In this document: positions 48,859 through 62,343 of the stretch, in pieces
Position numbering within the stretch: the stretch's first letter is position 1
How the letters are laid out: each line of letters starts with the position of its first letter
Assembly: GCA_001179505.1 (NCBI GenBank)
Contig: CDMY01000396.1
Location: 1 to 64,000, forward strand
Source of the DNA: Vitrella brassicaformis CCMP3155
Taxonomy: Eukaryota > Protista > Chromerida
DNA: 64,000 nucleotides
Direction of reading: 5' to 3'
The notes under the pieces: model-generated
Told to the model about the DNA's origin: nothing
Databases searched by the model: none
What the model saw: only the letters and a program-made list of their open reading frames with translations
Position numbers and translations under genes: made by a program

Positions 48859-49315
48859 ATGAATGGATGGATGAATGAAGGGAGGGAGGGAGGGAGGGAG
48901 GTGTGATATCCTTCGTGTCTACGCTACCGCTATGCTTGGCTGCACTGAAATGTACTGTATAGCTAAGAGATTCTCAAGTGTCTTGCTGGAGTGGAGTGGT
49001 GTATGAAAGAAAGGCGCTGGACACGGCGGAGGTGTGGCGTTCATTCCGTGTGTGTGTGTGTGTGTGTGAACCACGGTTGTGCTTTCCTATCACACCATGA
49101 ATCGATTGGAGTCGAATACCTCACGACACCTACATACATATATCCAGTACAGACAGACAGACAGACACGGACACCGCGTCAAGTACTCTTATTTGTTTTT
49201 TCCTGCATGGATCACGAGCACGGGTGCTTGACCACCAACCAACTGAATGTATGTGTGTGTGTGTGTGTACACACCTACTCGATCTGTGCAGGTATGGATG
49301 CGTATACTGTGTACT

Positions 49316-49615
49316 NNNNNNNNNNNNNNNNNNNNNNNNNNNNNNNNNNNNNNNNNNNNNNNNNNNNNNNNNNNNNNNNNNNNNNNNNNNNNNNNNNNNN
49401 NNNNNNNNNNNNNNNNNNNNNNNNNNNNNNNNNNNNNNNNNNNNNNNNNNNNNNNNNNNNNNNNNNNNNNNNNNNNNNNNNNNNNNNNNNNNNNNNNNNN
49501 NNNNNNNNNNNNNNNNNNNNNNNNNNNNNNNNNNNNNNNNNNNNNNNNNNNNNNNNNNNNNNNNNNNNNNNNNNNNNNNNNNNNNNNNNNNNNNNNNNNN
49601 NNNNNNNNNNNNNNN
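49316..49615. other. Assembly gap (300 N)
   Basis: N run between two tandem units of about 1.1 kb (48203-49315 and 49616-about 50728). Confidence 0.99.
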
Positions 49616-50271
49616 CTTCGGCAGAGCATCCCCATCCCCCTTCGTCCACGGCGGACGATGCTGCTCTCGACTTCCTGACGGACGCGGTGCCGTCGATGCG
49701 AGATGACCCGGCCGCCGTGTACGAGGGCAAGGTCAAGGGGCGAGTGATGCGGCTGGACAACCAGCCCAGCAAGAAGCAGCAGCAGGGAGAGCCCAAGGCC
49801 AAGCAGAAGCCACCACGGCGGCTCACCAAGATGAGCAACAACGAGGCCAGGAGACGGGGCCTCTACGACTTGCAAGACGGCACACTGAGTTATGCCGACT
49901 GCCTCCCCCTGAATGAGTTGTGGAGCCAGTACGCCGAGCAGCTGATGCACGAGCGGCTGCCCATCACCGAGAGGGGCAGCCGGCTGGCGGCGGCCGACCT
50001 GCATGGCGCATTTGTGAGAGTGGACAAGGCCAGGGTGCCGAGTTACATCGGTCTTGACGGCATTATCGTGCAGGAGACCGAGCAGACGATTCGGCTGATG
50101 TGCCAGGACAGCCGCCTTCGCACGGTGGTCAAGGGCCAGGTGGTGCTGAGTGTGGTCGTGCTGGGCGTCAAGTACTTTCTGCATGGCCCGCAGCTGGCCT
50201 ACCGGCCTAGTGTCCGCTCCAAAGTCAAATTCAAGCCGACCACCAAGGGCCTGGGGCTCGGCTGGCTCTGA
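49616..50271 (+). CDS. POP4: POP4/Rpp29 copy 3 (5' end lost in the gap)
   Basis: Open frame to GLGLGWL*. The 3' flank is identical to copy 2, but internal variants (EPKAKQ) match copy 1. Confidence 0.7.
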
Positions 50272-51699: not shown

Positions 51700-53456
51700 T
51701 CATCGCTCGTCTGTGGAGGAGCTCTCCCATGTTTTCGGGTTCGTCCACCCGTGGCAGCAGGCCCTCCTCGCCCCCTCAGTGCCGATCTTCCTCCAGGCGG
51801 CCGCACTTTGATGACAAGCAGCGAGATTTGACTCTTTGATGACAAGATTTGCTCTTTGATGACACAACATGATCCCATCAATGCGATATGATTGTCAGGC
51901 CATGTAAAACACGTTGAGGTCTGGCATTGGGGCAGTGTGCAGCCGGATGTCGTTGTCAAGTGGTGTATGGGTTTGTGTGGGTCTGTGCGACTCGTGACTT
52001 GACGCGCGACGATGACTCATGTGCCCATGTGGTAGTGTAGCTGCACCTGATGATTAAACAGACAGCGACACACATCTGCACCCTCACCCGCCACCACACA
52101 CCATCACTCACCATCTCTGCCCGCAATGCAGCACACGCCTGTTTTGCGCCATCGCTCCCGCCGTAGTCACAGGGGTGGAATGGGCTGGATTGCTTCTGCT
52201 GCTTGTTCTGTTGCCACTGAGCGTACCAGAACTTGCCCTGCTTATGCCAGTGCACGCCCGTGATTCCACTCTTGGGTGGTGCCCACCCGCCGCCCCTCTC
52301 CGTCCTGTCCCCCCACACCTGCTTGGCCAGTGCCTCGGCTGCTTCCTGAACCATGGATGCGTCGATTCGTTCATCAGACTCGGCTGGCGGATGGTTCTCT
52401 CCCACCCACCTGTGCCTCCTTCATCCCCATCTTCAGGACGCAGAATTCCTTGATGTAACGATTCTCATCACCGGGCGCCTGCACTTTCCACTGGTTGTTA
52501 GTCGAGTCGAAGGTCACACCGGGCTGGCGGGACTTGTACACTCCAGACGGGATGATGGTCATGTTGTTGGGTCTGGTCGACGTCATGGGTTCGAGGGGGA
52601 CGGATGGAGCGGGATGCTTGTGGGGCATCATGTCGGACTCAGTGCGAGGGGGCATGACTGCACAGAAACCAGAGCAAGTAATGGGGACTTGTCATTCCGT
52701 GCACTGCACTGCCGTGGGCGACCTCACCGGCATTGATAGCGCGGCGCTCCCGTCTGTCCTTGAGGTCAACCCATCGACGACGCTTCTACACAGAAACGGA
52801 CCATCACATCCATACAAATGTGTGCGTCTGCCTCTCCTGAATGTCTTACCTCAGCACGACGGTCTGGATTGCCTTCTTCCTCGGCAGCGGCCGCACACTC
52901 AGACTCACCCTGCCAACATATACACACACACACACACACACGCATGAGACATATGTTACACCAATCCATCCGCACCTCCCAGGTGAGTGCGGCCCTTTCC
53001 TCACCTTGTTGCTCGGTCCAGCTCCCTCCTCTTACGCCCTCCCGCCTCACGCCCTCCGGCCTTACGCCTTCCCGCCTTACGCCCTCCCACGCTCCTGCCC
53101 GCTGCCTTGTTTGCCGTTTTGCGGCTCTTCTTTGCCCTCCCTCGGCGGCCCGATGCCTTCTCCTCCTCCTCCTCCTCCTCCTCCTCGCTGGATGCCTCGT
53201 CAGCGCCGCCCTCCCACTCCTCGTCATCCCCCACACCCGCTGTGCGGTGCCGCTTATTGACCTTCTTGTGGGCCAGCAGGGCACTCAATGGGTATTCGTC
53301 CTCGTCTGGACCGTCCAGCTCCATGCTCACTGAGATCTTCTCGCAGCGGTGTGTCGGGGGCTGATGCAGCGATGGCCAGCTGGGCGGCGGCGGCGGCGGC
53401 TCTGCGGGTAATCGGGGGGCCGGGAATGGCTGCGGCGTCAGGTATGTCGGACACAT
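51700..53456 (-). CDS. ApiAP2-type transcription factor with at least two AP2 domains (3' end uncertain)
   Basis: YKSRQPGVTFDSTNNQWKVQ...IKEFCVLKMGMKEAQ (about 52410-52540) and KSGITGVHWHKQGKFWYAQWQQNKQQKQSSPFHPCDYGGSDGAKQACAALR (about 52110-52280); acidic/basic N-terminal region with GRKAG repeats. Confidence 0.8.
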
Positions 53457-53673
53457 GGTGGTGCTGAACACCTTCTCCCCCCTTAATCACACTGCCACGT
53501 GCTCTGTCGACCGCCATTTGGTGAATGTGACGGGCACTGGGCACCGCAGCGAAGACGGCCCCGTCCCAGAGGTCCATAGAAGCCTCATCCATGGTGAGGG
53601 AAAACAGCCGACAGAGCCATGCGTAAATACATTCCAACATATAAGCTCGCAGATCAGTGGCAACAGAGCAAGA

Positions 53674-56366
53674 ATGGCTGATGAGGAAGATGACCGACCC
53701 ATCTATGCTGGCCTCCCGCCACCGGCGCCACAGAGCGAGGATTCCGACGTCTATCCGGCTGGCGCTCTTCGCACACTCGGGCAAGCACGGGCCGCGGTCG
53801 TCACGAAGCTTCGCTTTGTGATCGACCGCTGGTGCCCAGACGAGGTGCGGATCCCCATCTGGGCACATGTGCAGAAGCTGTGTCGACCGGGGATGGAAGT
53901 GACGGACTTCCTGGGCGGGATGTACCTCATGATCCTGTGAGCCGTGACACCACACACACGTAGATCATCCCGTCCTGTCCACACTGCTCTCTCTCGCCCC
54001 TATTGTGTGTGTGTGCAGAGGGGGTGTGGTGCCTCGGCTGCCGGACGACGCGCCGTACAAGTGGAGCCCGGACAAGCACGCCTTCGTCGAAAAGGGCGTC
54101 ACGGAGCGGCGGCTTCCACCGGCGATGAAAGCCAGCAAGGTCCTTCCGGCCCAGGAATGGCACACCCATGCACTGGTAGGCTGCATTATGATGCCAACGG
54201 CTACATCGCTCGATCTCAAGGCCCATGTCCTGTGTGGCTGCAGGGCAAATTGGAACCTCTGTTCGAGGAGGCCTGCGGGAAGATGGCTCCTGATGCTAGG
54301 GACCGATGCATGGCCGGGTGGCGGCTCATGGCCGCAAGGCTCAGGGTCCCCGGTCTTCCCCCACTCGATGATCTCCTCAAGGATGCGTGTGAGAGCGAGG
54401 TCGAGCTCCTGTGGCCCCGCACACCCGAAGGTTCGATGTTCGTGCACTCTGAAGGCTGTACTCCATTGTTGATGTGTGTGCACATCAGAGTGCACGCGTG
54501 CCCGTGGCCGTGTGGGAGTGCTATGTGCAGTGGGTGCACTTGTCTTGGCCACCGGGCACCTTCCTGACGGCTTAGACAAGGACAAACTATCGCCATTGGT
54601 GCGGCTTACTGACTGACACTAACACACACATTGATGGATGGATGGATGGACGGACTGACCGGGGTGTGTGTGTGTGTGTGTGTGTGTGTGGTATGTCAGG
54701 TGCATGATTTTCTCTGGGGCCTTGTATCTCTCCGTGAGAGCAGCGGCGGAAAGGATGCAGATGGTGACGTCAGGATGACTGCCGAGGTAGGGAGGGGCAC
54801 AGAGCAGATGCACGTGCAAATGCATCATCACCATGCACACATGCTGTGTGTACGTGCAGGCAAGCTCGGCCGTGGTGGAGCCTGACGAGGACGCCCCCCT
54901 CACCACTCGGCTCAACCGTACCTTATCAGGTGTCGTCAAGAGCACAGACTGACTTGGTTGCCAGTGTTACATCTGTGTGTGGGCATGTTCCCTAACAGCT
55001 TTGACAGTGATGGCCCAGCTTGCCGAGGTGGATCAGGTCCACAACCGATCTGTCGTCTACCGGTTGGAGAACACCATCGCGCTCAGCGCCACATCCCGTC
55101 GCGATCTTCTGCGCAACATCAAGACAGGTCGGTGTGCATACGAACTGAGCCCATCGCCGCAAACCTATCCCCTCTCTCCGACAGGAATGGCCATGTTCAC
55201 CGGCGCAACCATGCGTCAGCTGGGGCTCCTCACTGAGTCCAGCGCCGTCTTCATGTCGACACAGATCGCCATCAAGACGGAGGACGGGTCCGGACGCATC
55301 TCTGTCCCGGCTTGTGGGATGGAGGTTGCTGATTCGATGGCGACAGGCAAGCGGGACGAAATGGCTGGGACACTCTCCCTGTGGTCGTATTTCTGCTGCG
55401 TCTCTTTCAATGCCTTGTCAGGCGATGTGGGCCTCATCTGCTGGGCCAAGCCGGACGACTGGGGCGGAGGTCGTGTTTTGACAGTGGCGACGGTCGAACA
55501 GGAGGGCGTGGCCCGGCAGGTTTACAAGATGGACATCTTCCACGCCGTGTTGGCAAGTAGGCACGACGCAGAGGGAAAGAAAGCAGACATTTCAGCATGT
55601 CTCCATTTCGTCTGTTCTTGTCAGCAAAGGGCTATCCGTCCGATGCCGTCATGAAGCTGTTCATCCGCCTGTCCACAATCACTCATGTGGCGGTAGGCGA
55701 CATCATATGGCCACGCACTCGGGCATTGTCATCTTTTCAGGTGTTTCACTTCGGCGATGGCGACGTCCATGGTCTCGAGATCGCACTCGCCATAGCCGCC
55801 CGGCTGGAGAGGCATAAGGTCGACGTGCATTGGTGTGCTGTGACATGCCTGCAGGTCGAAATGTGGGCAGCGCAGGTGCGTCACAGGCTCACGTGCCTAG
55901 CCAGACAGCATGTGTGTGTCGGTGCCCTTCTTGATTGTCTTTTCGTCACCAGGCGAAGCTGGAACCCAAGGCGCTTAGCAAGAGCGACGAGAAGAAGGTG
56001 GATGCCATGCTGCGTGGGCCTACAGAGGGCCGCAAGAGTGCCGAGTATGCGGCGTACGAGGAGAAGCACGAGACGAAGGTAAGCACACACCGAGCTACAC
56101 ATGGCGCCCTCACACATCCCACCTGCGGTGCATGTCAGCTGTTCAAGAAGTGTGTCAAGGGCCAGCTGGAGACCATCCTAAAGACGCAGCAACAGATGAA
56201 GCTAGATGTGAGTGGATCGGAGATGAACATACATGTGGGCACTGTTTCTCCTGCTCTGTAGATGGTATTTGACAAGGTGGACGAGGGGGTGTTGAAGAAG
56301 GCCTTTCAGCAGTTGAAGGACAAGAGGCTGGCTGAGGACGCCGCTGAGAACAATGAGAGGATGTAG
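53674..56366 (+). CDS. SPO11: Divergent Spo11/DNA topoisomerase VI subunit A-like protein with long N-terminal extension, about 14 exons
   Basis: Spliced product: LSALTVMAQL...HNRSVVYR (R.x.x.x.Y; Tyr codon 55058-55060), GATMRQLGLLTES, TVEQEGV (Glu 55496-55498), VLATKGYPSDAVMKLFIRL, VFHFGDGDVHGLEI (DxD 55756-55764), ALSKSDEKKVDAML, QLETILKTQQQMKLD. Motif order matches Spo11/Top6A, and intron phases were checked as compatible. Confidence 0.8.
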
Positions 56367-56392
56367 GGGTGGTGTGAGACGGTCGTTTAGGT

Positions 56393-58400
56393 GTGACATC
56401 AGACGTCTATCTGCATGAGAATGAAAGACTCGTCAAGGGCTGGAAGGGCGACTGGCCATCGCAGGTGCAGCGATACTGCACCCACCTGACCATCGACTGC
56501 CAAGACCCGCGCACAAGAGACCTGTGGACGGCCATGCCATTGGAGGGCGCGTACGAGTGGGGCAAGAGGGCGGTGCGGCTGAGGCATCTGAAGGTCCGCT
56601 ATCCCTCCAGTCGGCCCAAGTGGTGTCTGGGCGTGTGGATGAGTATCTGTGAGGGTCACGCAAGCGGCCGGGCAGCACTGGTGGCCGAGAAGAAGAAGCA
56701 GCAGGAGAGCCACGGCAACGGTGCGGCAGCGGAGCTGGCCGACCAGGGCACACTGGAGGTGTTATCGTTCGAGAGCGTGGCGCTGCGGCAGAGAGCTGGC
56801 GTCATGTGTGAAGTGGTCCCCGTCCCCGCCTCCCTCGTCCATCTGCCAGCCCTCAAGACCGTCACTTCCCTGCCGAGTGAGTGTGCACCGGCGCGTGTCG
56901 ACAGGCAGTGGTCCACCCCCAACCTCGCCACACTCAGCATCACCGGCTGCCAGAAGCTCGACACAGAGGGTGGGCGGGCGTGGCTGGAGGGATGTCATCG
57001 GCTGGAGGATCTTGACCTGAGTGGGATAGACGAGGAGGACGGCAAGGGCAAACGGCTGGTGGAGGTCCTCAGTGGTGCCTTCCCGCCCGACGGCAAGTGC
57101 CTCGCGAGTCTGCGGTCACTGCGTGGCGTTGACGTGTCCGCTGCAGAGAAGTCCGGCCATCATCCCTTTTTCCCGGAGATCGACAGTGTGCGGGAGACGC
57201 TGGTGCAGCGAGGGGTCAGGCGTACACTCAAGCATATTGACTTGAGTCGCCTGCTGCCGATGGAGCTGCTCAACAGTGACGAGTGTCGGGTGCGGGTCGG
57301 CACAGTGGCTGACCTGATGTAAGTCAGACACGCACACGCACAGCCAGCCAGCCAGCCAGCCATCTGTCTCTGCATGTTCGTCGCTGTAACGTAATCAGGG
57401 GTGCCATCATGCATGGTGATTTCCTTTCCGACGAGCCACGAGCTTTCCATACGGATCACGAAGTCGTCATCGCCGCCGAGGTATTCGTCCTCTGGGCCCG
57501 TGTGTACTACGTGGGCACTCACCGCTCGCAGTGCGTCAAGAAGATCATCGCCGACGTGGCCGCTCAGGCAGGGACGGTGGTCTACTCGGGGAATAGCGAC
57601 CCGTCGGCGGCCACCTGCATCTCATTCGACACCTTCCCAAAGGCGCACACTTTCGAGATGGCTTGGAGTGCTCTGGCGTCGGAAGAGGAGCGCGCGACGG
57701 CCGTCGACATCGCCTGCTCCCTCCCGAACTTGTCTCGTGTCGAGGTGGGCTCTCAACATCGGCCCCTGACGTCAGGTGCCGGTGCCGGCGTCGTTGCTTT
57801 CCTGACGAAGATCAAGCCCCTCGGGAGCATCGACTTGACCATCCACACGACGAGCGCATCGGTCATGTCGACGGCTGGTGGCGGGCGAGAGTGGGAGCTG
57901 GGCAGACATGCGGCGTATATTTCGCCCATCGAGAACCTGCATCTCAAAGTCTACGGTACCTGAGATGGATCGATGGGTGGATGGATCAATGGATGGATGT
58001 GTGCATGCGCATGTGTGTGTTTCGCAGGCGTCACAGCTGCAGGCGTCAATGTTGATGCTGAAGACTTCTATGGCTGTGTGCTGGCGATGCTGGCATCCTC
58101 AACCGACCTGGAGGTACGCCGACAAAGAGTGCAATTTCCCGCTGGCCAGCGGCCACAAGTTTTGTTGTGTCGTACTTGTTCAGTTCCACGTGAGCACCTC
58201 CATACGCATCGACGACGCTGCCCTTCGCGCGTACCTCCACAAGCGCTTCCGAAGTCAGTACGGCCTGTTCAACCTTCAGCCGGGTCAAGAATACAAAGCG
58301 GAGTGTGCCGGCGACGACCTGCTGCTTAAGCGCCGCAGAAGGCCGATGGATGGATAGGCACGCGGACTCACTGTTGACATATCGCATGCGACGAGATAAG
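56393..58400 (+). CDS. Lineage-expanded LRR-like hypothetical protein (paralogue of the 7381 gene); start unclear
   Basis: RYCTHLTIDCQDPRTRDLWTAMPLEGAYEWGKRAVRL...WCLGVWMSICEGHASGR...GTLEVLSF, followed by LRR-like LATLSITGCQKLD...LEDLDLSGID. Confidence 0.7.
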
Positions 58401-59146: not shown

Positions 59147-62100
59147 ATGCCGCCATGCCGCACAACGACGACAGGCAAAAGAAGCGACGCCATCTCCCCA
59201 CCGTCTGCAAGCGATGGCGGTGGCCGTGCCGACAGCTCAAGGCAACGTACAAGGACACAATCACGCCAACGACCACCATCATCCCGGCCATCCCCTTCCA
59301 CCCCCTTCCGCCCCTCCCTCTTGCTGACGTCTTCCCTCCTGCTGCTGTCGTCATTTTGCCAAGCGAAGACTCGTGACGAGTGGGTGGATTCTCGCCGTGT
59401 GATTTATCAGGTGGTGACGGACCGCTTTGCCCTTGAGGGCGGGCAGCAGGGTACGAAGCAGGGGACGTGTTGGAAGGACGGCTGCGAGAACGGGGGCTAC
59501 TGCGGCGGCACTTGGGCGGGGCTGCGGGAGCAGCTGGGGTACATCAAGGGCATGGGGTTCAACGCCATATGGATTTCCCCACACGTCCAAAACACCAAAT
59601 GCGGCTACCATGGTGAGCGAGGGGGACGGACGGCCTGGTGAGCACAAAGTAGGGAGGCTGTGTGTGTGTGTGTGTTGTCGGCGTGTGTCAGGGTTTTGGC
59701 CGAAGAATTTCGCCGAGTTGAATGAGCATTTTGGGACGGAAGATGAACTGTACGCTCTGGTCAAGCGCGCCCACGACCTCGACATATGGATCGTCATGGA
59801 CACAGGCAAGCGTGTGCATCAACGAGCCAACCAAAACATGATGGCCGACAGCGCGTGTGTCTATCATGACATGGCAGTGTTGAACCACATGAGCATGGAG
59901 GAGCCAATCGAGAACTTGTGGCCCTTCAACGACACCGTCTACTACCGCGAGCACTGTCCCATGGACTACAACGACCGATACGCCGTCCGCCACTGCTGGC
60001 TCATGGGGCTCCCTGACCTCAATGACGACATATACGCCGTCCGGTAGGCCTCTGTGCGCGCGTGAAAGTGACCGAAACTCACTCCTCCCGACCCACCCCT
60101 GTGTGTATTACCTCCCTGGCACGTGTGCAGGAAGTATCTGATAGACTGGGCGGAGCACCAGGTGCTCAAATACGAGTTTGACGGGTACCGGATGGACGCC
60201 ATCGTGCACCTGCAGTACGACACGCTGGCCGAGGTGTGGGAGCGGCTGTCCAACCACACATTCACCATCGGGGAGGCCTTCATGCCGCTGGTCAAGGACA
60301 TGGCCTGGTACCAATTCAACAAGTGGAAGCAACGGCAGCTCATGGATGGGGTCAGTCAGTGAGTGAATGGCTGGTGTGGTGGATGGATCGCCGTCCATCC
60401 ATCCACTGTGGGTGTGAGTTGGGTTGGGGTGGTCTTCAGGTGACGAACTACCCGATGGCCATTCAGCTGCGGAAGAGCTTCGGGCAGAAGGAGAGCCTCT
60501 ATGGCGTCAAGTGGATCTGGGGAGAGCTCATGAAGGAAGTCAGGTACGCACACACGCAGACCAGACCCACACACACCTGCACCGTCCACCCGCCCCACCC
60601 AGCGACCGCCATCCCTTCACCTATCGTCCGTCTCAGGGACGTCAGCGCGTTGGCCTTGTTTGTGGAGTCCCACGACATGAAGCGGTTCCTCAACATGCAG
60701 CCCGACTGGACCCTCTTCACCAATGCGCTCACATGGATACTCGCCGCCGACAACATTCCCATCGTCTACTACGGCTCCGAGCAGGCAATGACTAACGGTA
60801 CGGTCAGCGGGAAATGGGAAGGAGACGCACATTTCGGGGGGAAGGATGTGTAGGTGTGGGTGTGGGTGTGTGTTGCTATCAGGTCATCGAGAGCCGCTGT
60901 GGTACAAGGGCTATGACCAGGAGGCCGTCTACTACGAGCTAATCAGGCGGATGATCACACACAGGGTCGCAGGGGTGTTCGACGGACCACAGCAAGAGAG
61001 ACACGTACGCAGGACATCCATGAACACCCCAAACACACCTTGCCCACTTCGCCGTCTCTGCAGGTAGAGGATTGGCTGTACGTGTATTCCCGCAACAACA
61101 CCCTAGTCGTCACGTCCAACCTCGGCTCCGGCAAGGGTAACCAGCGGTTCATCCCCACGGCCGAGCTGCCCCCCTCCTACACCAAAGACACCGTCCTCTG
61201 CAATGTCCTCACCGACACGTGCGACACGACCGTGCAGGCCGGCGGGCTAGAGGTGGTCATCCACAATGGGCAGCCACTCGTGCTGGTGCCGCAGGAGCAG
61301 TTGATCCCCTACACCGAGCCGGAGATATTCGGGGAGGCGCCGATTGACGACGACAGTGAGGAGAGTGAGGAGAGTGAGGAGAGTGAGGAGGGTGTGGGTG
61401 TGGATGAGGGCGGAGATGACGGTGGGTACGAGTACTACGGCGATGGGGCGTATGGAGACTACTATGGCGCCTCGCAGGCCCCGCTGGTCGACGAGTACTA
61501 CGGCGACCTGCAGAAGGAGATCGACGAGGTCCTGCAGGAGCAGGAGGGAGACATCACCACCACCATTTCCAGCACCCCTCTCCCCACCAGCAGCAGCAGC
61601 AGCACCACACCCATTCCAACCGATGGCATCATGGCCACCCAACGGACAGCCGATGACATCCCAACATTAGCGCCCATCGACATGGAGGAGGAGGAACAAC
61701 AAGAAGACGAGGAGGACGGCAGCAGCACCGACACAGCAACAGAGACCGACGGAGACGGAGACGGATGGGCCACCCGCGGGTTAGAGGAGCACTGCTTCGA
61801 GTATGCTGACTACCTGGGCAACGACGTAGGCGGCGTGAAGGTGTCATCGCCCAAGGGGTGTCAGCTGGCGTGTCAGGAGGACGACCGTTGTCTGTTCTTC
61901 ACCTATTTGCCGCGGTTCACGGAGATGTCGAGTGTCAACTGCTGGCTCAAGGCCACCGACCAAGGGAGGGTAATCAGGTGGGGCGGCGACACCCCATCCG
62001 TCTCGGGGCCCAAGACATGCCGTATGCCCTGCACACACACACACACACACAGACACACAGACAGAGAGACAGACCGAGAGGGAGGGCGGCAGGGATGGAT

Positions 62101-62343
62101 GAATGGATGTGTGTGTGTGTGTGGTGTGTGCAGCCACGAGCAGTGTGGTTGGTGTGGAGATGTCAGTGGAGGACGACAACGGCCCCAGCATTCCCAGGGA
62201 GATACCCCCTGACCCTGGTTAGTCGAGCAAAGAGACACCACTGGTTGACTCATCGATGAGTGTTGTGTTGTGTTGTGTGTGGTGTGGGTGCAGCGTACAT
62301 GGCATCTTTGCGGAAGAGGCAACAGCAGGGCGGCAGCACGTGA
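59147..62343 (+). CDS. GH13 (Taka/fungal-type) alpha-amylase with acidic linker and C-terminal PAN/Apple domain
   Basis: [42 protein letters not shown]|FW, catalytic DGYRMDA / GEAF / ESHD, IPIVYYGSEQ. The C-terminal CFEYADYLGNDV...CQLACQEDDRCLFFTY...CWLK...VSGPKTC is Apple-type. Confidence 0.92.

What the first reader, a model, noticed from the sequence alone, without database searches (positions are those of the whole stretch)
53674..56366. Hidden, highly divergent Spo11/Topo VI-A-like transesterase with all catalytic residues apparently retained
No single ORF reveals this gene. Splicing about 14 short exons gives, in the right order: a winged-helix-like segment HNRSVVYR (cf. the Spo11/Top6A R-[DE]-x-[FY]-Y catalytic Tyr motif), G..MRQLG (cf. 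Top6A G..RE.LG), the TOPRIM Glu in TVEQ (VEK), VLATKGYP (ITxKGxP), FGDGDVHGLEI (DxDPHGxEI), and C-terminal helices ending in KLD (KAEIE-like). The sequence between motifs is far from the consensus I know for SPO11-1/-2/TOP6A. It may be a fast-evolving extra paralogue or a repurposed DNA double-strand-break enzyme in a chromerid. The motifs are seen in sequence; family assignment rests on known Spo11/Top6A motifs; novelty is inference.
Basis: partly seen in the sequence, partly recalled or inferred. Interest (0 to 1): 0.9.

Follow-up and report, generated by a model that had tools for sequence, protein, structure and literature searches.

The report
Cryptic divergent Spo11/Top6A-like gene
A real, expressed 14-exon gene of the alga Vitrella brassicaformis encodes a very divergent relative of Spo11/topoisomerase VI-A, the enzyme family that cuts both DNA strands, which databases list only as 'uncharacterized'.

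Summary
The public model (Vitrella brassicaformis CEM09875.1, 'uncharacterized protein') wrongly keeps the 48-nt intron 10, which splits the Toprim motif block.

The family call is supported, though not by simple searches. Pfam, NCBIfam and phmmer against PDB find nothing for this protein. Other evidence does:
- A same-genome paralogue (CEM15511.1; 32% identity, E 4e-74) passes Pfam's TOP6A-Spo11_Toprim cut-off.
- hhalign of the pair against 32 archaeal Top6A gives probability 92%, P 6e-7. It aligns R308/Y312, E414, KGYP and D462xD464 with the Top6A catalytic Arg/Tyr, Glu, KGxP and DxD.
- ESM Atlas, AlphaFold DB, Foldseek and VIA searches all rank Top6A/Spo11 first, above JetD/MksG.

'All catalytic residues retained' is only partly right. 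The fourth acidic residue (the KAE glutamate) aligns with a lysine.

Most likely this is a lineage-specific, fast-evolving Spo11/Top6A-like transesterase with a new 290-aa N-terminal region. Its activity and role are untested. This scan has noted similar divergent Spo11-like genes elsewhere in this genome. Both loci examined have an AP2-domain gene head-to-head upstream.

The parts
53674..56366 (+). Whole CDS span of the Spo11/Top6A-like gene: 14 exons, 600 aa. Exons: 53674-53936, 54019-54175, 54244-54430, 54489-54598, 54700-54786, 54860-54929, 54999-55127, 55185-55346, 55422-55556, 55625-55692, 55741-55875, 55953-56078, 56139-56207, 56262-56366. Stop TAG at 56364-56366.
   Evidence: RNA-contig joints, splice-site refinement, translation. 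Identical to annotated P0001/CEM09875.1 except for intron 10.
53674..54929 (+). Exons 1-6 (aa 1-291): family-specific N-terminal region with no known domain. Residues ~53-250 are conserved with the paralogue.
   Evidence: No Pfam hit. BLASTP alignment to P0003 covers it. AF2 gave no confident fold.
54999..55346 (+). Exons 7-8: winged-helix (5Y-CAP-like) region. R308 is at 55046-55048 and the putative catalytic Y312 at 55058-55060.
   Evidence: R and Y align with the Top6A Arg/Tyr (TKRdvfY) in hhalign. They are invariant in the 32-sequence MAFFT alignment and conserved in the paralogue.
55422..55875 (+). Exons 9-11: Toprim core. E414 at 55496-55498, K435-G-Y-P438 at 55627-55638, D462 at 55756-55758, D464 at 55762-55764.
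   Evidence: hmmsearch alignment to the Top6A HMM, hhalign, invariant columns. AF2 pLDDT is 75-92 in most of this region. PADLOC JetD hit at E 0.009 over the same stretch.
55693..55740 (+). Intron 10 (48 nt, in frame, no stop). It is spliced out in RNA but kept as 16 codons (VGDIIWPRTRALSSFQ) in the public gene model.
   Evidence: The joint is present in X1, X2 and X8. The paralogue has a gap and an intron at the same position. Keeping it drops the Top6A HMM score from 10.3 to -2.7 bits.
55347..55421 (+). Intron 8, the only GC-AG intron (75 nt, in frame).
   Evidence: Joint in X1 and X8; donor GC and acceptor AG.
55953..56366 (+). Exons 12-14: C-terminal helices of the Toprim domain plus a helical tail. 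QLETI...QMKLD aligns with the Top6A ...KAEIQAL helix; K564 stands where Top6A has the conserved Glu.
   Evidence: hhalign greedy alignment, MAFFT A2, AF2 helices at pLDDT ~80-90.
51959..52405 (-). AP2-domain ORF piece of an upstream minus-strand gene. That gene appears to be transcribed divergently from the Spo11-like gene. Context only, not part of the gene.
   Evidence: Pfam AP2 E 6.1e-5, 23.7 bits, below the curated cut-off. The paralogue's locus has an AP2 gene in the same position and orientation, E 3.5e-9, above the cut-off.

Best explanation
The locus is a real, transcribed, 14-exon gene of Vitrella brassicaformis. Its 600-aa product has a family-specific N-terminal region of about 290 aa with no known domain. 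This is followed by a very divergent Top6A/Spo11-type cleavage module: a winged-helix (5Y-CAP) domain carrying R308 and Y312, then a Toprim domain carrying E414 and D462-x-D464.

It is one of at least two paralogues that arose by gene duplication within this lineage, and it is the faster-evolving copy.

Inferred mechanism, by analogy with Top6A/Spo11: two subunits (a homodimer, or a heterodimer with the paralogue) form a DNA-binding groove. The Toprim acidic residues hold Mg2+. Tyr312 of one subunit attacks the DNA backbone beside the metal site of the other, making a double-strand break with the protein covalently joined to the 5' ends.

Shown here: the gene structure, its expression, and homology of sequence and fold with retention of the Arg/Tyr/Glu/DxD core. 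Inferred only: dimerisation, catalysis, any partner protein and the biological role.
For: - Splicing and expression: (three runs, one contig spanning all exons).
- Identity with CEM09875.1.
- Paralogue P0003: BLASTP E 4e-74 over the full length. It passes Pfam PF21180 TOP6A-Spo11_Toprim at 27.5 bits against a cut-off of 24.1.
- Profile-profile: hhalign probability 92.1%, P 6e-7, 207 columns, catalytic residues aligned. Controls reach at most 25.8 against 58.6.
- MAFFT with 30 archaeal Top6A: R308, Y312, E414, G436, D462, D464, G467 and I470 are invariant in all 32 sequences.
- Only 12 of 51 highly conserved Top6A columns are kept. They include the active-site Arg, Tyr, Glu, DxD and the KG.P motif, and 11 of the 12 are also kept in the 32%-identical paralogue. 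This pattern suggests selection on the active site.
- Searches independent of my alignment: ESM Atlas features 0.93 and TM 0.59-0.62 to Top6A/Spo11 clusters. The protein's own AlphaFold DB model matches my model at TM 0.70.
- AF2 model (pLDDT 68.8): Foldseek's top 10 PDB hits are all Top6A/Spo11. VIA Z is 15.7-18.1 for Top6A, 15.3-15.5 for Spo11, 12.4 for MksG and 11.6 for JetD.
- Residue spacing: Y-to-E 102 and E-to-DxD 48, against 96 and 52 in M. mazei Top6A (residue numbers from PMC13040014).
Against: - Pfam, NCBIfam and phmmer/hmmsearch against PDB find no Top6A/Spo11 match for this protein itself.
- The hhalign score for this protein alone is weak: 30.3, P 0.004.
- The Top6A seeds were fished with a motif pattern resembling the candidate's own motifs. 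My AF2 alignment also contained Top6A sequences. Both tests therefore lean towards Top6A.
- The winged-helix part of the model has low confidence, pLDDT about 50-60.
- Several near-invariant Top6A features are lost: the KAE glutamate (M. mazei E342) is Lys, the GS loop is deleted, the DxDP proline is Val and the VEK lysine is Gln.
- No biochemical evidence exists, and no Top6B-like partner was examined.
Confidence: 0.72

Rival explanations
1. It is a catalytically dead or repurposed Spo11-like protein. It keeps the fold and perhaps DNA binding or dimerisation, acting as a regulatory partner or decoy, but no longer cleaves DNA.
For: - Only 12 of 51 conserved Top6A positions are kept.
- The KAE glutamate of the acidic tetrad is Lys in both paralogues (role of E342 from PMC13040014).
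- The GS loop is deleted and the DxDP proline replaced.
- The branch is very long, with the window copy the longer: 1.04 against 0.46.
Against: - Arg, Tyr, Glu and both Asp are kept in both paralogues despite 32% overall identity. That is hard to explain without selection on the active site.
- In M. mazei Top6, E342Q increases cleavage rather than abolishing it (PMC13040014). Loss of that Glu therefore need not inactivate the enzyme.
Confidence: 0.17
2. It works like the bacterial JetD/MksG nucleases: a Toprim dimer that hydrolyses DNA without a covalent tyrosine intermediate, possibly in a defence-like role.
For: - The only direct library hits for this protein are PADLOC JetD models: E 0.009 for residues 410-488, and E 0.019-0.045 for the exon 10-11 piece.
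- The paralogue has weak JetD_C and DUF2399 hits.
- JetD/MksG appear among the structural matches.
Against: - Top6A/Spo11 score higher in every comparison: Foldseek E 1e-8 against 1e-3 to 6e-3, VIA Z 15-18 against 11.6-12.4, Atlas TM 0.59-0.62 against 0.54-0.55.
- For the paralogue, Pfam PF21180 beats JetD_C, 3.5e-6 against 0.088.
- MksG, and by that account JetD, lack a catalytic Tyr in the CAP-like domain (PMC10123090). This protein has the R-x3-Y aligned with the Top6A Arg/Tyr.
- The Glu-x-Glu proposed as nucleophile in JetD/MksG has no counterpart here: the helix reads K-L-D/N.
Confidence: 0.06
3. It is simply Vitrella's ordinary SPO11-1, SPO11-2 or TOP6A orthologue, badly diverged, doing the standard meiotic or endoreduplication job.
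For: - One paper states that Vitrella keeps the full core meiotic gene set including Spo11, without giving accessions (PMC7522995).
- I could not show that separate canonical SPO11 genes exist in this genome.
- The scan has a note of a TopoVIB-like gene elsewhere in the genome (unchecked).
Against: - Published surveys say all Top6A/Spo11 members keep the conserved WHD and Toprim residues and are easily recognised (PMC11302465). This protein escapes Pfam altogether.
- It has a 290-aa N-terminal extension shared only with its Vitrella paralogue.
- Exhaustive phmmer of the WH region over 1.84 billion proteins found no orthologue in any other organism.
- The two copies share 11 of the window gene's 13 intron positions, pointing to a lineage-specific duplication. 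SPO11-1 and SPO11-2 are described instead as ancient paralogues (PMC12203943).
Confidence: 0.05

Closest known systems
Topoisomerase VI subunit A (Top6A; archaea, plants as SPO11-3)
   Same: - Same domain order (5Y-CAP winged helix, then Toprim).
- Aligned Arg/Tyr, Toprim Glu, KGxP and DxD-x-x-G-x-x-I, with near-identical spacing.
- Best structural matches: VIA Z 15.7-18.1, rmsd 2.9 Å over 200 residues to 1d3y.
   Different: - About 12-15% identity; only 12 of 51 highly conserved columns are kept.
- The KAE Glu is Lys, the GS loop is deleted and the DxDP Pro is Val.
- There is an extra 290-aa N-terminal region and a C-terminal helical tail.
- Below all Pfam thresholds.
- No Top6B partner was examined.
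Spo11 (meiotic DSB protein; SPO11-1/SPO11-2)
   Same: - Same fold and catalytic layout.
- Yeast Spo11 core-complex structures match at Z 15.3-15.5 over about 250 residues.
- Spo11 clusters are among the top Atlas matches.
- It exists as a paralogue pair, which recalls the SPO11-1/-2 heterodimer idea (PMC12203943).
   Different: - Not placed in any SPO11 clade; no eukaryotic sequences could be fetched for a tree.
- Found in ordinary RNA-seq assemblies of cultures, so not shown to be meiosis-specific.
- The N-terminal region is unrelated to the known Top6BL-binding helix as far as sequence shows.
Vitrella brassicaformis CEM15511.1 / A0A0G4FNX1 (same-genome paralogue)
   Same: - 32% identity over the full length, E 4e-74.
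- Same N-terminal region and same catalytic residues.
- The same Lys replaces the KAE Glu.
- 11 of the window gene's 13 intron positions are shared.
- An AP2 gene lies head-to-head upstream.
   Different: - The paralogue carries a roughly 100-aa acidic low-complexity insert before the winged helix.
- It lacks the C-terminal tail and has N where this protein has D566.
- It is less diverged: it passes Pfam PF21180 and has a branch of 0.46 against 1.04.
JetD / MksG (Wadjet/MksBEFG nuclease subunit)
   Same: A Top6A-type Toprim dimer fold. There are weak PADLOC JetD hits and structural matches at Z 11.6-12.4.
   Different: JetD/MksG lack the CAP-domain catalytic Tyr (PMC10123090) and work with an SMC motor. 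This protein keeps R-x3-Y and matches Top6A/Spo11 better in every test.

Membership tests
Top6A/Spo11 (type IIB topoisomerase A subunit family) | Toprim domain recognised by the curated family profile (Pfam PF21180) | tested here: not met
   The annotated protein P0001 gets no Pfam family at E<=10, and neither do the exon pieces. The annotated sequence carries a retained intron inside the motif block; the corrected sequence could not be given to Pfam by reference. With a local Top6A HMM the corrected protein scores 10.3 bits, against -2.7 for the annotated one and at most 3.6 for shuffles. The paralogue P0003 does pass PF21180 at 27.5 bits against a cut-off of 24.1.
Top6A/Spo11 (type IIB topoisomerase A subunit family) | Winged-helix 5Y-CAP domain recognised by Pfam TP6A_N (PF04406) | tested here: not met
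   No TP6A_N hit for P0001 or P0003. The region is nevertheless aligned by hhalign (query 297-380 to Top6A 121-190) and covered by the structural matches to 9o0g and 8urq from model residue 1. AF2 confidence there is only about 50-60.
Top6A/Spo11 (type IIB topoisomerase A subunit family) | Catalytic Tyr with Arg four residues before it (R-x3-Y) in the winged helix | tested here: met
   R308 and Y312 align with the Top6A Arg/Tyr in hhalign. They are invariant across 32 sequences in MAFFT and conserved in the paralogue. That they act in catalysis is not tested.
Top6A/Spo11 (type IIB topoisomerase A subunit family) | Toprim metal-binding Glu and DxD | tested here: met
   E414, D462 and D464 are invariant columns. 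The E-to-DxD spacing is 48, against 52 in M. mazei Top6A.
Top6A/Spo11 (type IIB topoisomerase A subunit family) | Fourth acidic residue / clasp Glu of the C-terminal K-A-E helix (M. mazei E342) | tested here: not met
   Both hhalign (greedy) and MAFFT put K564 (K621 in the paralogue) at the Glu column, which is 30/30 Glu in Top6A. An Asp (Asn in the paralogue) lies two residues later. The alignment here is of low confidence.
Top6A/Spo11 (type IIB topoisomerase A subunit family) | Overall two-domain fold matching solved Top6A/Spo11 structures better than other Toprim proteins | tested here: met
   Foldseek's top 10 PDB hits are all Top6A/Spo11. VIA Z is 15.3-18.1, against 11.6-12.4 for JetD/MksG and about 10 for DnaG. 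The Atlas structure search on an independent model gives TM 0.59-0.62. Caveat: my AF2 alignment contained Top6A sequences.
Top6A/Spo11 (type IIB topoisomerase A subunit family) | Works with a Top6B / TOPOVIBL partner | not testable with these tools
An unchecked scan note mentions a TopoVIB-like gene elsewhere.
Canonical eukaryotic clades SPO11-1 / SPO11-2 / SPO11-3 (TOP6A) | Phylogenetic placement inside one of the three clades. No motif separates them (PMC11302465). | not tested
A tree with archaeal Top6A alone puts the pair on a branch of about 9 changes per site and says nothing about origin.
JetD/MksG (Wadjet nuclease) | Family profile match (JetD_C / DUF2399 / PADLOC JetD) and absence of a CAP-domain catalytic Tyr | tested here: not met
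   There are only sub-threshold hits: PADLOC E 0.009, and no Pfam JetD_C hit for P0001. The R-x3-Y is present. Structural scores are lower than for Top6A/Spo11.

The most novel reading that the evidence does not exclude
Vitrella may carry a separate, multi-copy fourth branch of eukaryotic Top6A/Spo11-like enzymes, outside SPO11-1/-2/-3. The branch would be defined by a new ~290-350-aa N-terminal domain and loss of the clasp glutamate. Each copy would be paired head-to-head with an AP2 DNA-binding gene. The pair would act as a sequence-targeted DNA-breaking module independent of the canonical meiotic machinery, for example in a mobile element, a programmed rearrangement or genome defence.
Probability: 0.12. 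Interest if true: 0.85.

Novelty: new variant of a known kind. Interest (0 to 1): 0.58.

Why it matters
Recent surveys describe eukaryotic Top6A/Spo11 proteins as three well-conserved clades whose key residues are always present and easily recognised (PMC11302465, PMC9665070). Other type IIB branches (Topo VIII, Mini-A) are known from prokaryotic mobile elements and viruses.

A transcribed, lineage-specific family in a free-living relative of apicomplexan parasites differs from that picture. It keeps only the Arg/Tyr/Glu/DxD core and has lost the clasp glutamate that restrains cleavage in Top6. It has also gained a new N-terminal domain. It would be a natural experiment on what is minimally needed for Spo11-type DNA breakage and how that activity gets re-used.

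The case also shows a practical point. One retained 48-nt intron in a public gene model was enough to hide the domain from profile searches.

Tried and rejected
- Pfam, NCBIfam, PADLOC and phmmer-against-PDB on exon pieces. Nearly blank, and an unfair test, because intron 9 splits the Toprim domain between the pieces.
- ESM Atlas on piece A with intron read-through: nothing.
- The search for homologous proteins with piece A, P0001 and P0003: only self-hits, because of the length window and the word filter.
- The first search of protein representatives was lost; the repeat worked.
- hmmsearch of the family profile against PDB: nothing.
- AF2 with the 4-sequence family alignment: pLDDT 34, unusable.
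- Tree with archaeal Top6A only: the branch is too long to say anything about origin.
- The search for related loci in JGI metagenomes and IMG/VR: no relatives.
- tblastx of the flanks of the two paralogous loci: no shared neighbours apart from the short AP2-domain match.
- No HNH or NUMOD domains were found next to either locus, so the 'three-gene module' of scan note s1-199304 was confirmed only for its AP2 part.
- Literature and supplement searches for the accessions, or for Vitrella SPO11 identifiers: nothing.
- Chance motifs, rejected on the shuffle controls.
- A single gene continuing into the ORF at 56393, rejected. RNA contigs run unspliced through the TAG stop, and the next ORF is in another frame.
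Full report
**1. Is the gene there?**

No single ORF covers the region. I laid Logan contigs of four public runs on window 52900-57900. Runs X1, X2 and X8 show spliced joints. X3 shows none and is collinear with the genome, apart from breaks at simple repeats, so it behaves as DNA.

Twelve joints are listed directly. The thirteenth (54598/54700, across a (GT)13 repeat found) is carried by an X2 contig. It also fits the length arithmetic of the single 4188-nt X8 contig that spans all exons.

Shifting each joint within its ambiguity gives 12 GT-AG introns and one GC-AG intron at 55347-55421. The 14 exons from 53674 to 56366 make an 1803-nt CDS of 600 codons with no internal stop.

**2. What is it in the public record?**

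An exhaustive phmmer of the exon 7-9 piece against 1.84 billion representative proteins found two proteins only.

- P0001 (616 aa) is the annotated product of this gene: CEM09875.1 / A0A0G4FAF1, 'uncharacterized protein' of Vitrella brassicaformis CCMP3155. It equals my RNA-based model except that it keeps intron 10 (48 nt, in frame) as 16 extra residues. All three RNA runs splice that intron out.
- The second hit belongs to a cluster whose full-length member is P0003: CEM15511.1 / A0A0G4FNX1, 634 aa, same species. UniRef names it 'Topoisomerase 6 subunit A/Spo11 TOPRIM domain-containing protein'.

P0001 and P0003 align over their whole length (32% identity, E 4e-74). P0003 has a gap exactly where P0001 carries the 16 residues. 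I mapped P0003's gene on its contig (L088:8001-10849). It has 14 introns, and 11 of the window gene's 13 intron positions recur there in the same phase, including intron 10. The two are therefore paralogues by DNA-level duplication, and the public model of the window gene has a retained-intron error.

**3. Is it Spo11/Top6A-like?**

Simple searches say no.

- Pfam, NCBIfam, and phmmer or hmmsearch against PDB give nothing for the pieces, for P0001 or for the family profile.
- The only direct library hits are weak PADLOC JetD matches over the KGYP...DGD stretch, E 0.009-0.045.
- The paralogue does pass Pfam's curated threshold for PF21180 TOP6A-Spo11_Toprim: 27.5 bits against 24.1, E 3.5e-6, over KGMP...DCDIHGLEI. 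Its JetD_C and DUF2399 hits are weaker.

To test the corrected window protein itself, I fetched natural Top6A genes. I used a degenerate motif scan of prokaryotic genomes and kept 32 archaeal ORFs. Six ORFs were scanned with Pfam, and the five drawn from this Top6A set are full Top6A (PF21180 at E 1e-58 to 1e-70, plus TP6A_N).

- Their HMM scores the corrected protein 10.3 bits, P0003 20.8 bits and the annotated P0001 -2.7 bits. The best of 1000 shuffles scores 3.6.
- hhalign of the two-paralogue alignment against the Top6A alignment gives probability 92.1%, P 6e-7, score 58.6 over 207 columns (query 297-526, template 121-345).
- One hundred column-shuffled controls give mean 16.7, sd 2.8, maximum 25.8. 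The reversed alignment gives 20.8. The window protein alone gives 30.3.
- The alignment pairs HNRSVVY with TKRdvfY (R308 and Y312 on the Top6A Arg and Tyr), VATVEQ with LVVEK (E414), ATKGYP with TgKGQP, and FGDGDVHGLEI with lvDsDPfGlhI.
- An independent MAFFT alignment of 32 sequences makes R308, Y312, E414, G436, D462, D464, G467 and I470 invariant columns.
- Spacings are Y-to-E 102 and E-to-DxD 48. In M. mazei Top6A they are 96 and 52 (residue numbers from PMC13040014).

**4. Structure**

- AF2 with only the four family sequences failed (pLDDT 34).
- With the 32-sequence alignment, residues 294-616 of P0001 gave pLDDT 68.8 and pTM 0.66. The Toprim core is mostly at 75-92 and the winged helix at about 50-60.
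- Foldseek against PDB: the ten best hits are all Top6A (1d3y, 9o0g, 9o8p, 9o7o, 2q2e, 2zbk) or yeast Spo11 (8uru, 8urq), E 8.8e-9 to 2e-5. MksG follows at 1e-3 and JetD at 6e-3.
- VIA-align gives Z 15.7-18.1 for Top6A, 15.3-15.5 for Spo11, 12.4 for MksG, 11.6 for JetD and about 10 for DnaG.

Because my alignment contained Top6A, I looked for evidence that does not depend on it.

- The ESM Atlas search on P0001 294-616 gives feature scores of 0.93, with 191 shared features, to Top6A/Spo11 clusters. All of the best named hits belong to that family. Its own single-sequence model matches Spo11/Top6A clusters at TM 0.59-0.62 over about 240 residues, against 0.54-0.55 for JetD-type clusters.
- The paralogue gives 0.94 and TM 0.70-0.74.
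- In AlphaFold DB clusters, the protein's own public model matches mine at TM 0.70. It is followed by many 'DNA topoisomerase (ATP-hydrolyzing)' entries at E 1e-12 to 1e-8.

Homology with the Top6A/Spo11 superfamily is therefore well supported. I put it near 0.9.

**5. How far has it diverged?**

Of 51 columns that are at least 90% conserved among the 30 archaeal Top6A, the window protein keeps 12 and the paralogue 15.

- Kept: the Arg, Tyr, Glu, DxD, KG.P and G..I positions.
- Lost: the Lys of VEK, the Pro of DxDP (Val/Ile), the whole 'GS' loop after the third Toprim helix, and the K-A-E helix. There the Glu (E342 in M. mazei) aligns with Lys in both paralogues. E342 is part of the acidic tetrad and of a clasp with the catalytic-site Arg, and E342Q makes Top6 more prone to cleave (PMC13040014).

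'All catalytic residues retained' is thus only partly right.

In a tree with archaeal Top6A alone, the pair sits on a branch of about nine changes per site. The window copy has the longer tip, 1.04 against 0.46. This says nothing about origin.

**6. Distribution and context**

- No relative was found outside Vitrella: not in the 1.84-billion-protein library with the winged-helix piece, nor in JGI metagenomes or IMG/VR. The Toprim half was never searched exhaustively, so more distant relatives may exist.
- The scan's own notebook lists several other 'divergent Spo11/TopoVI-A-like genes with a long N-terminal region' on other pieces of this genome. It also lists a TopoVIB-like gene. These are unchecked, and some may be the P0003 locus seen from overlapping windows.
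- One note describes an AP2 gene head-to-head with a Spo11-like gene. I could confirm that at the P0003 locus (L088 6727-7815, minus strand; AP2 E 3.5e-9, above the cut-off).
- In weaker form, the same holds in this window (51959-52405, minus strand; AP2 E 6e-5, below the cut-off). The only similarity between the flanks of the two loci is this AP2 domain.
- AP2 domains seem frequent in this genome: three of the nine unrelated scan notes listed mention one. The pairing is therefore suggestive, not proven. No HNH or NUMOD domain was found.

**7. Mechanism**

Shown: a spliced, expressed gene, and a Top6A/Spo11-type fold with Arg/Tyr and Glu/DxD in register.

Inferred from the family's established chemistry (PMC13040014, PMC12203943): dimerisation, Mg2+ binding by E414/D462/D464, and attack by Y312 to give 5'-phosphotyrosyl-linked double-strand breaks.

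- The loss of the clasp Glu could mean looser control of cleavage, or control by a different element. The new N-terminal domain is a candidate.
- The selective retention of active-site residues in two copies that share only 32% identity argues for activity. The many other losses argue for caution. I put activity near 0.55-0.6.
- The role is open. The gene is present in RNA assemblies of ordinary cultures. This does not show meiosis specificity and does not exclude it.

**8. Novelty**

The paralogue's Toprim domain is already flagged by automatic annotation. AlphaFold DB holds a model of this protein. No paper in the searchable library mentions either accession. The surveys I read do not mention Vitrella or Chromera in their main text. 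Supplementary text was held for only one of them, and it did not mention them either.

I file it as a new variant of a known kind: a lineage-specific, strongly diverged Top6A/Spo11-like family with a new N-terminal domain. The fold and chemistry are the known ones, and the most exciting readings (a separate functional class, an AP2-guided module) remain untested.

Noticed in passing
window 51959-52405 (-) and L088:6727-7815 (-): Both Spo11-like paralogues have an AP2-domain gene upstream in head-to-head orientation: window E 6e-5 (below Pfam's cut-off), L088 E 3.5e-9 (above it). The AP2 domain is the only similarity between the flanks of the two loci. This may be a conserved divergent gene pair or chance in an AP2-rich genome.
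   Followed up: partly
window 55693-55740: The public gene model CEM09875.1 keeps this 48-nt in-frame intron as coding. RNA from three runs splices it out, and the paralogue has an intron at the same position. The 16 extra residues sit inside the KGxP-DxD block and abolish the profile match.
   Followed up: yes
window 56393-57322 (+): A 309-aa ORF in another frame opens 27 nt after the Spo11-like stop codon. It lies on the same unspliced stretch of the X1 and X8 RNA contigs (56262-57318, next intron 57319-57398). It has only a faint LRR_4 hit (E 0.23). It is either a closely packed neighbour with overlapping UTRs or a bicistronic transcript.
   Followed up: partly
window 53001-53471 (-): An acidic and basic low-complexity exon (a Glu run, then an Arg/Lys-rich tail) starts about 200 nt upstream of the Spo11-like ATG on the other strand, suggesting a shared bidirectional promoter. 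It is probably the first exon of the AP2 gene, but the link was not shown.
   Followed up: no
window 54599-54699: Intron 4 holds a perfect (GT)13.5 microsatellite (54664-54690) preceded by GGAT repeats. Read-laying skipped joints here.
   Followed up: no
window 59147-62212 (+): Several ORF pieces hit the alpha-amylase catalytic domain, alpha-amylase domain C and a PAN domain. This points to a spliced alpha-amylase gene with a C-terminal PAN/apple module.
   Followed up: no
window 48991-50268 (+): An ORF with an RNase P/MRP subunit p29 domain (E 4.9e-19).
   Followed up: no
L021, L046, L049 (bacterial MAG contigs from the motif scan): Bacterial ORFs of 436-489 aa carry EK..F...TKGEP...SD[IV]DPS in Top6A-like spacing. 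The one scanned (L049) had no Pfam family. They may be an undescribed Toprim family or chance matches to the pattern.
   Followed up: no
P0002/P0004 (MMETSP Transcript_168): The MMETSP transcript of the paralogue is split into two ORFs at the position of its intron after residue 495. It is likely an intron-retaining transcript.
   Followed up: no
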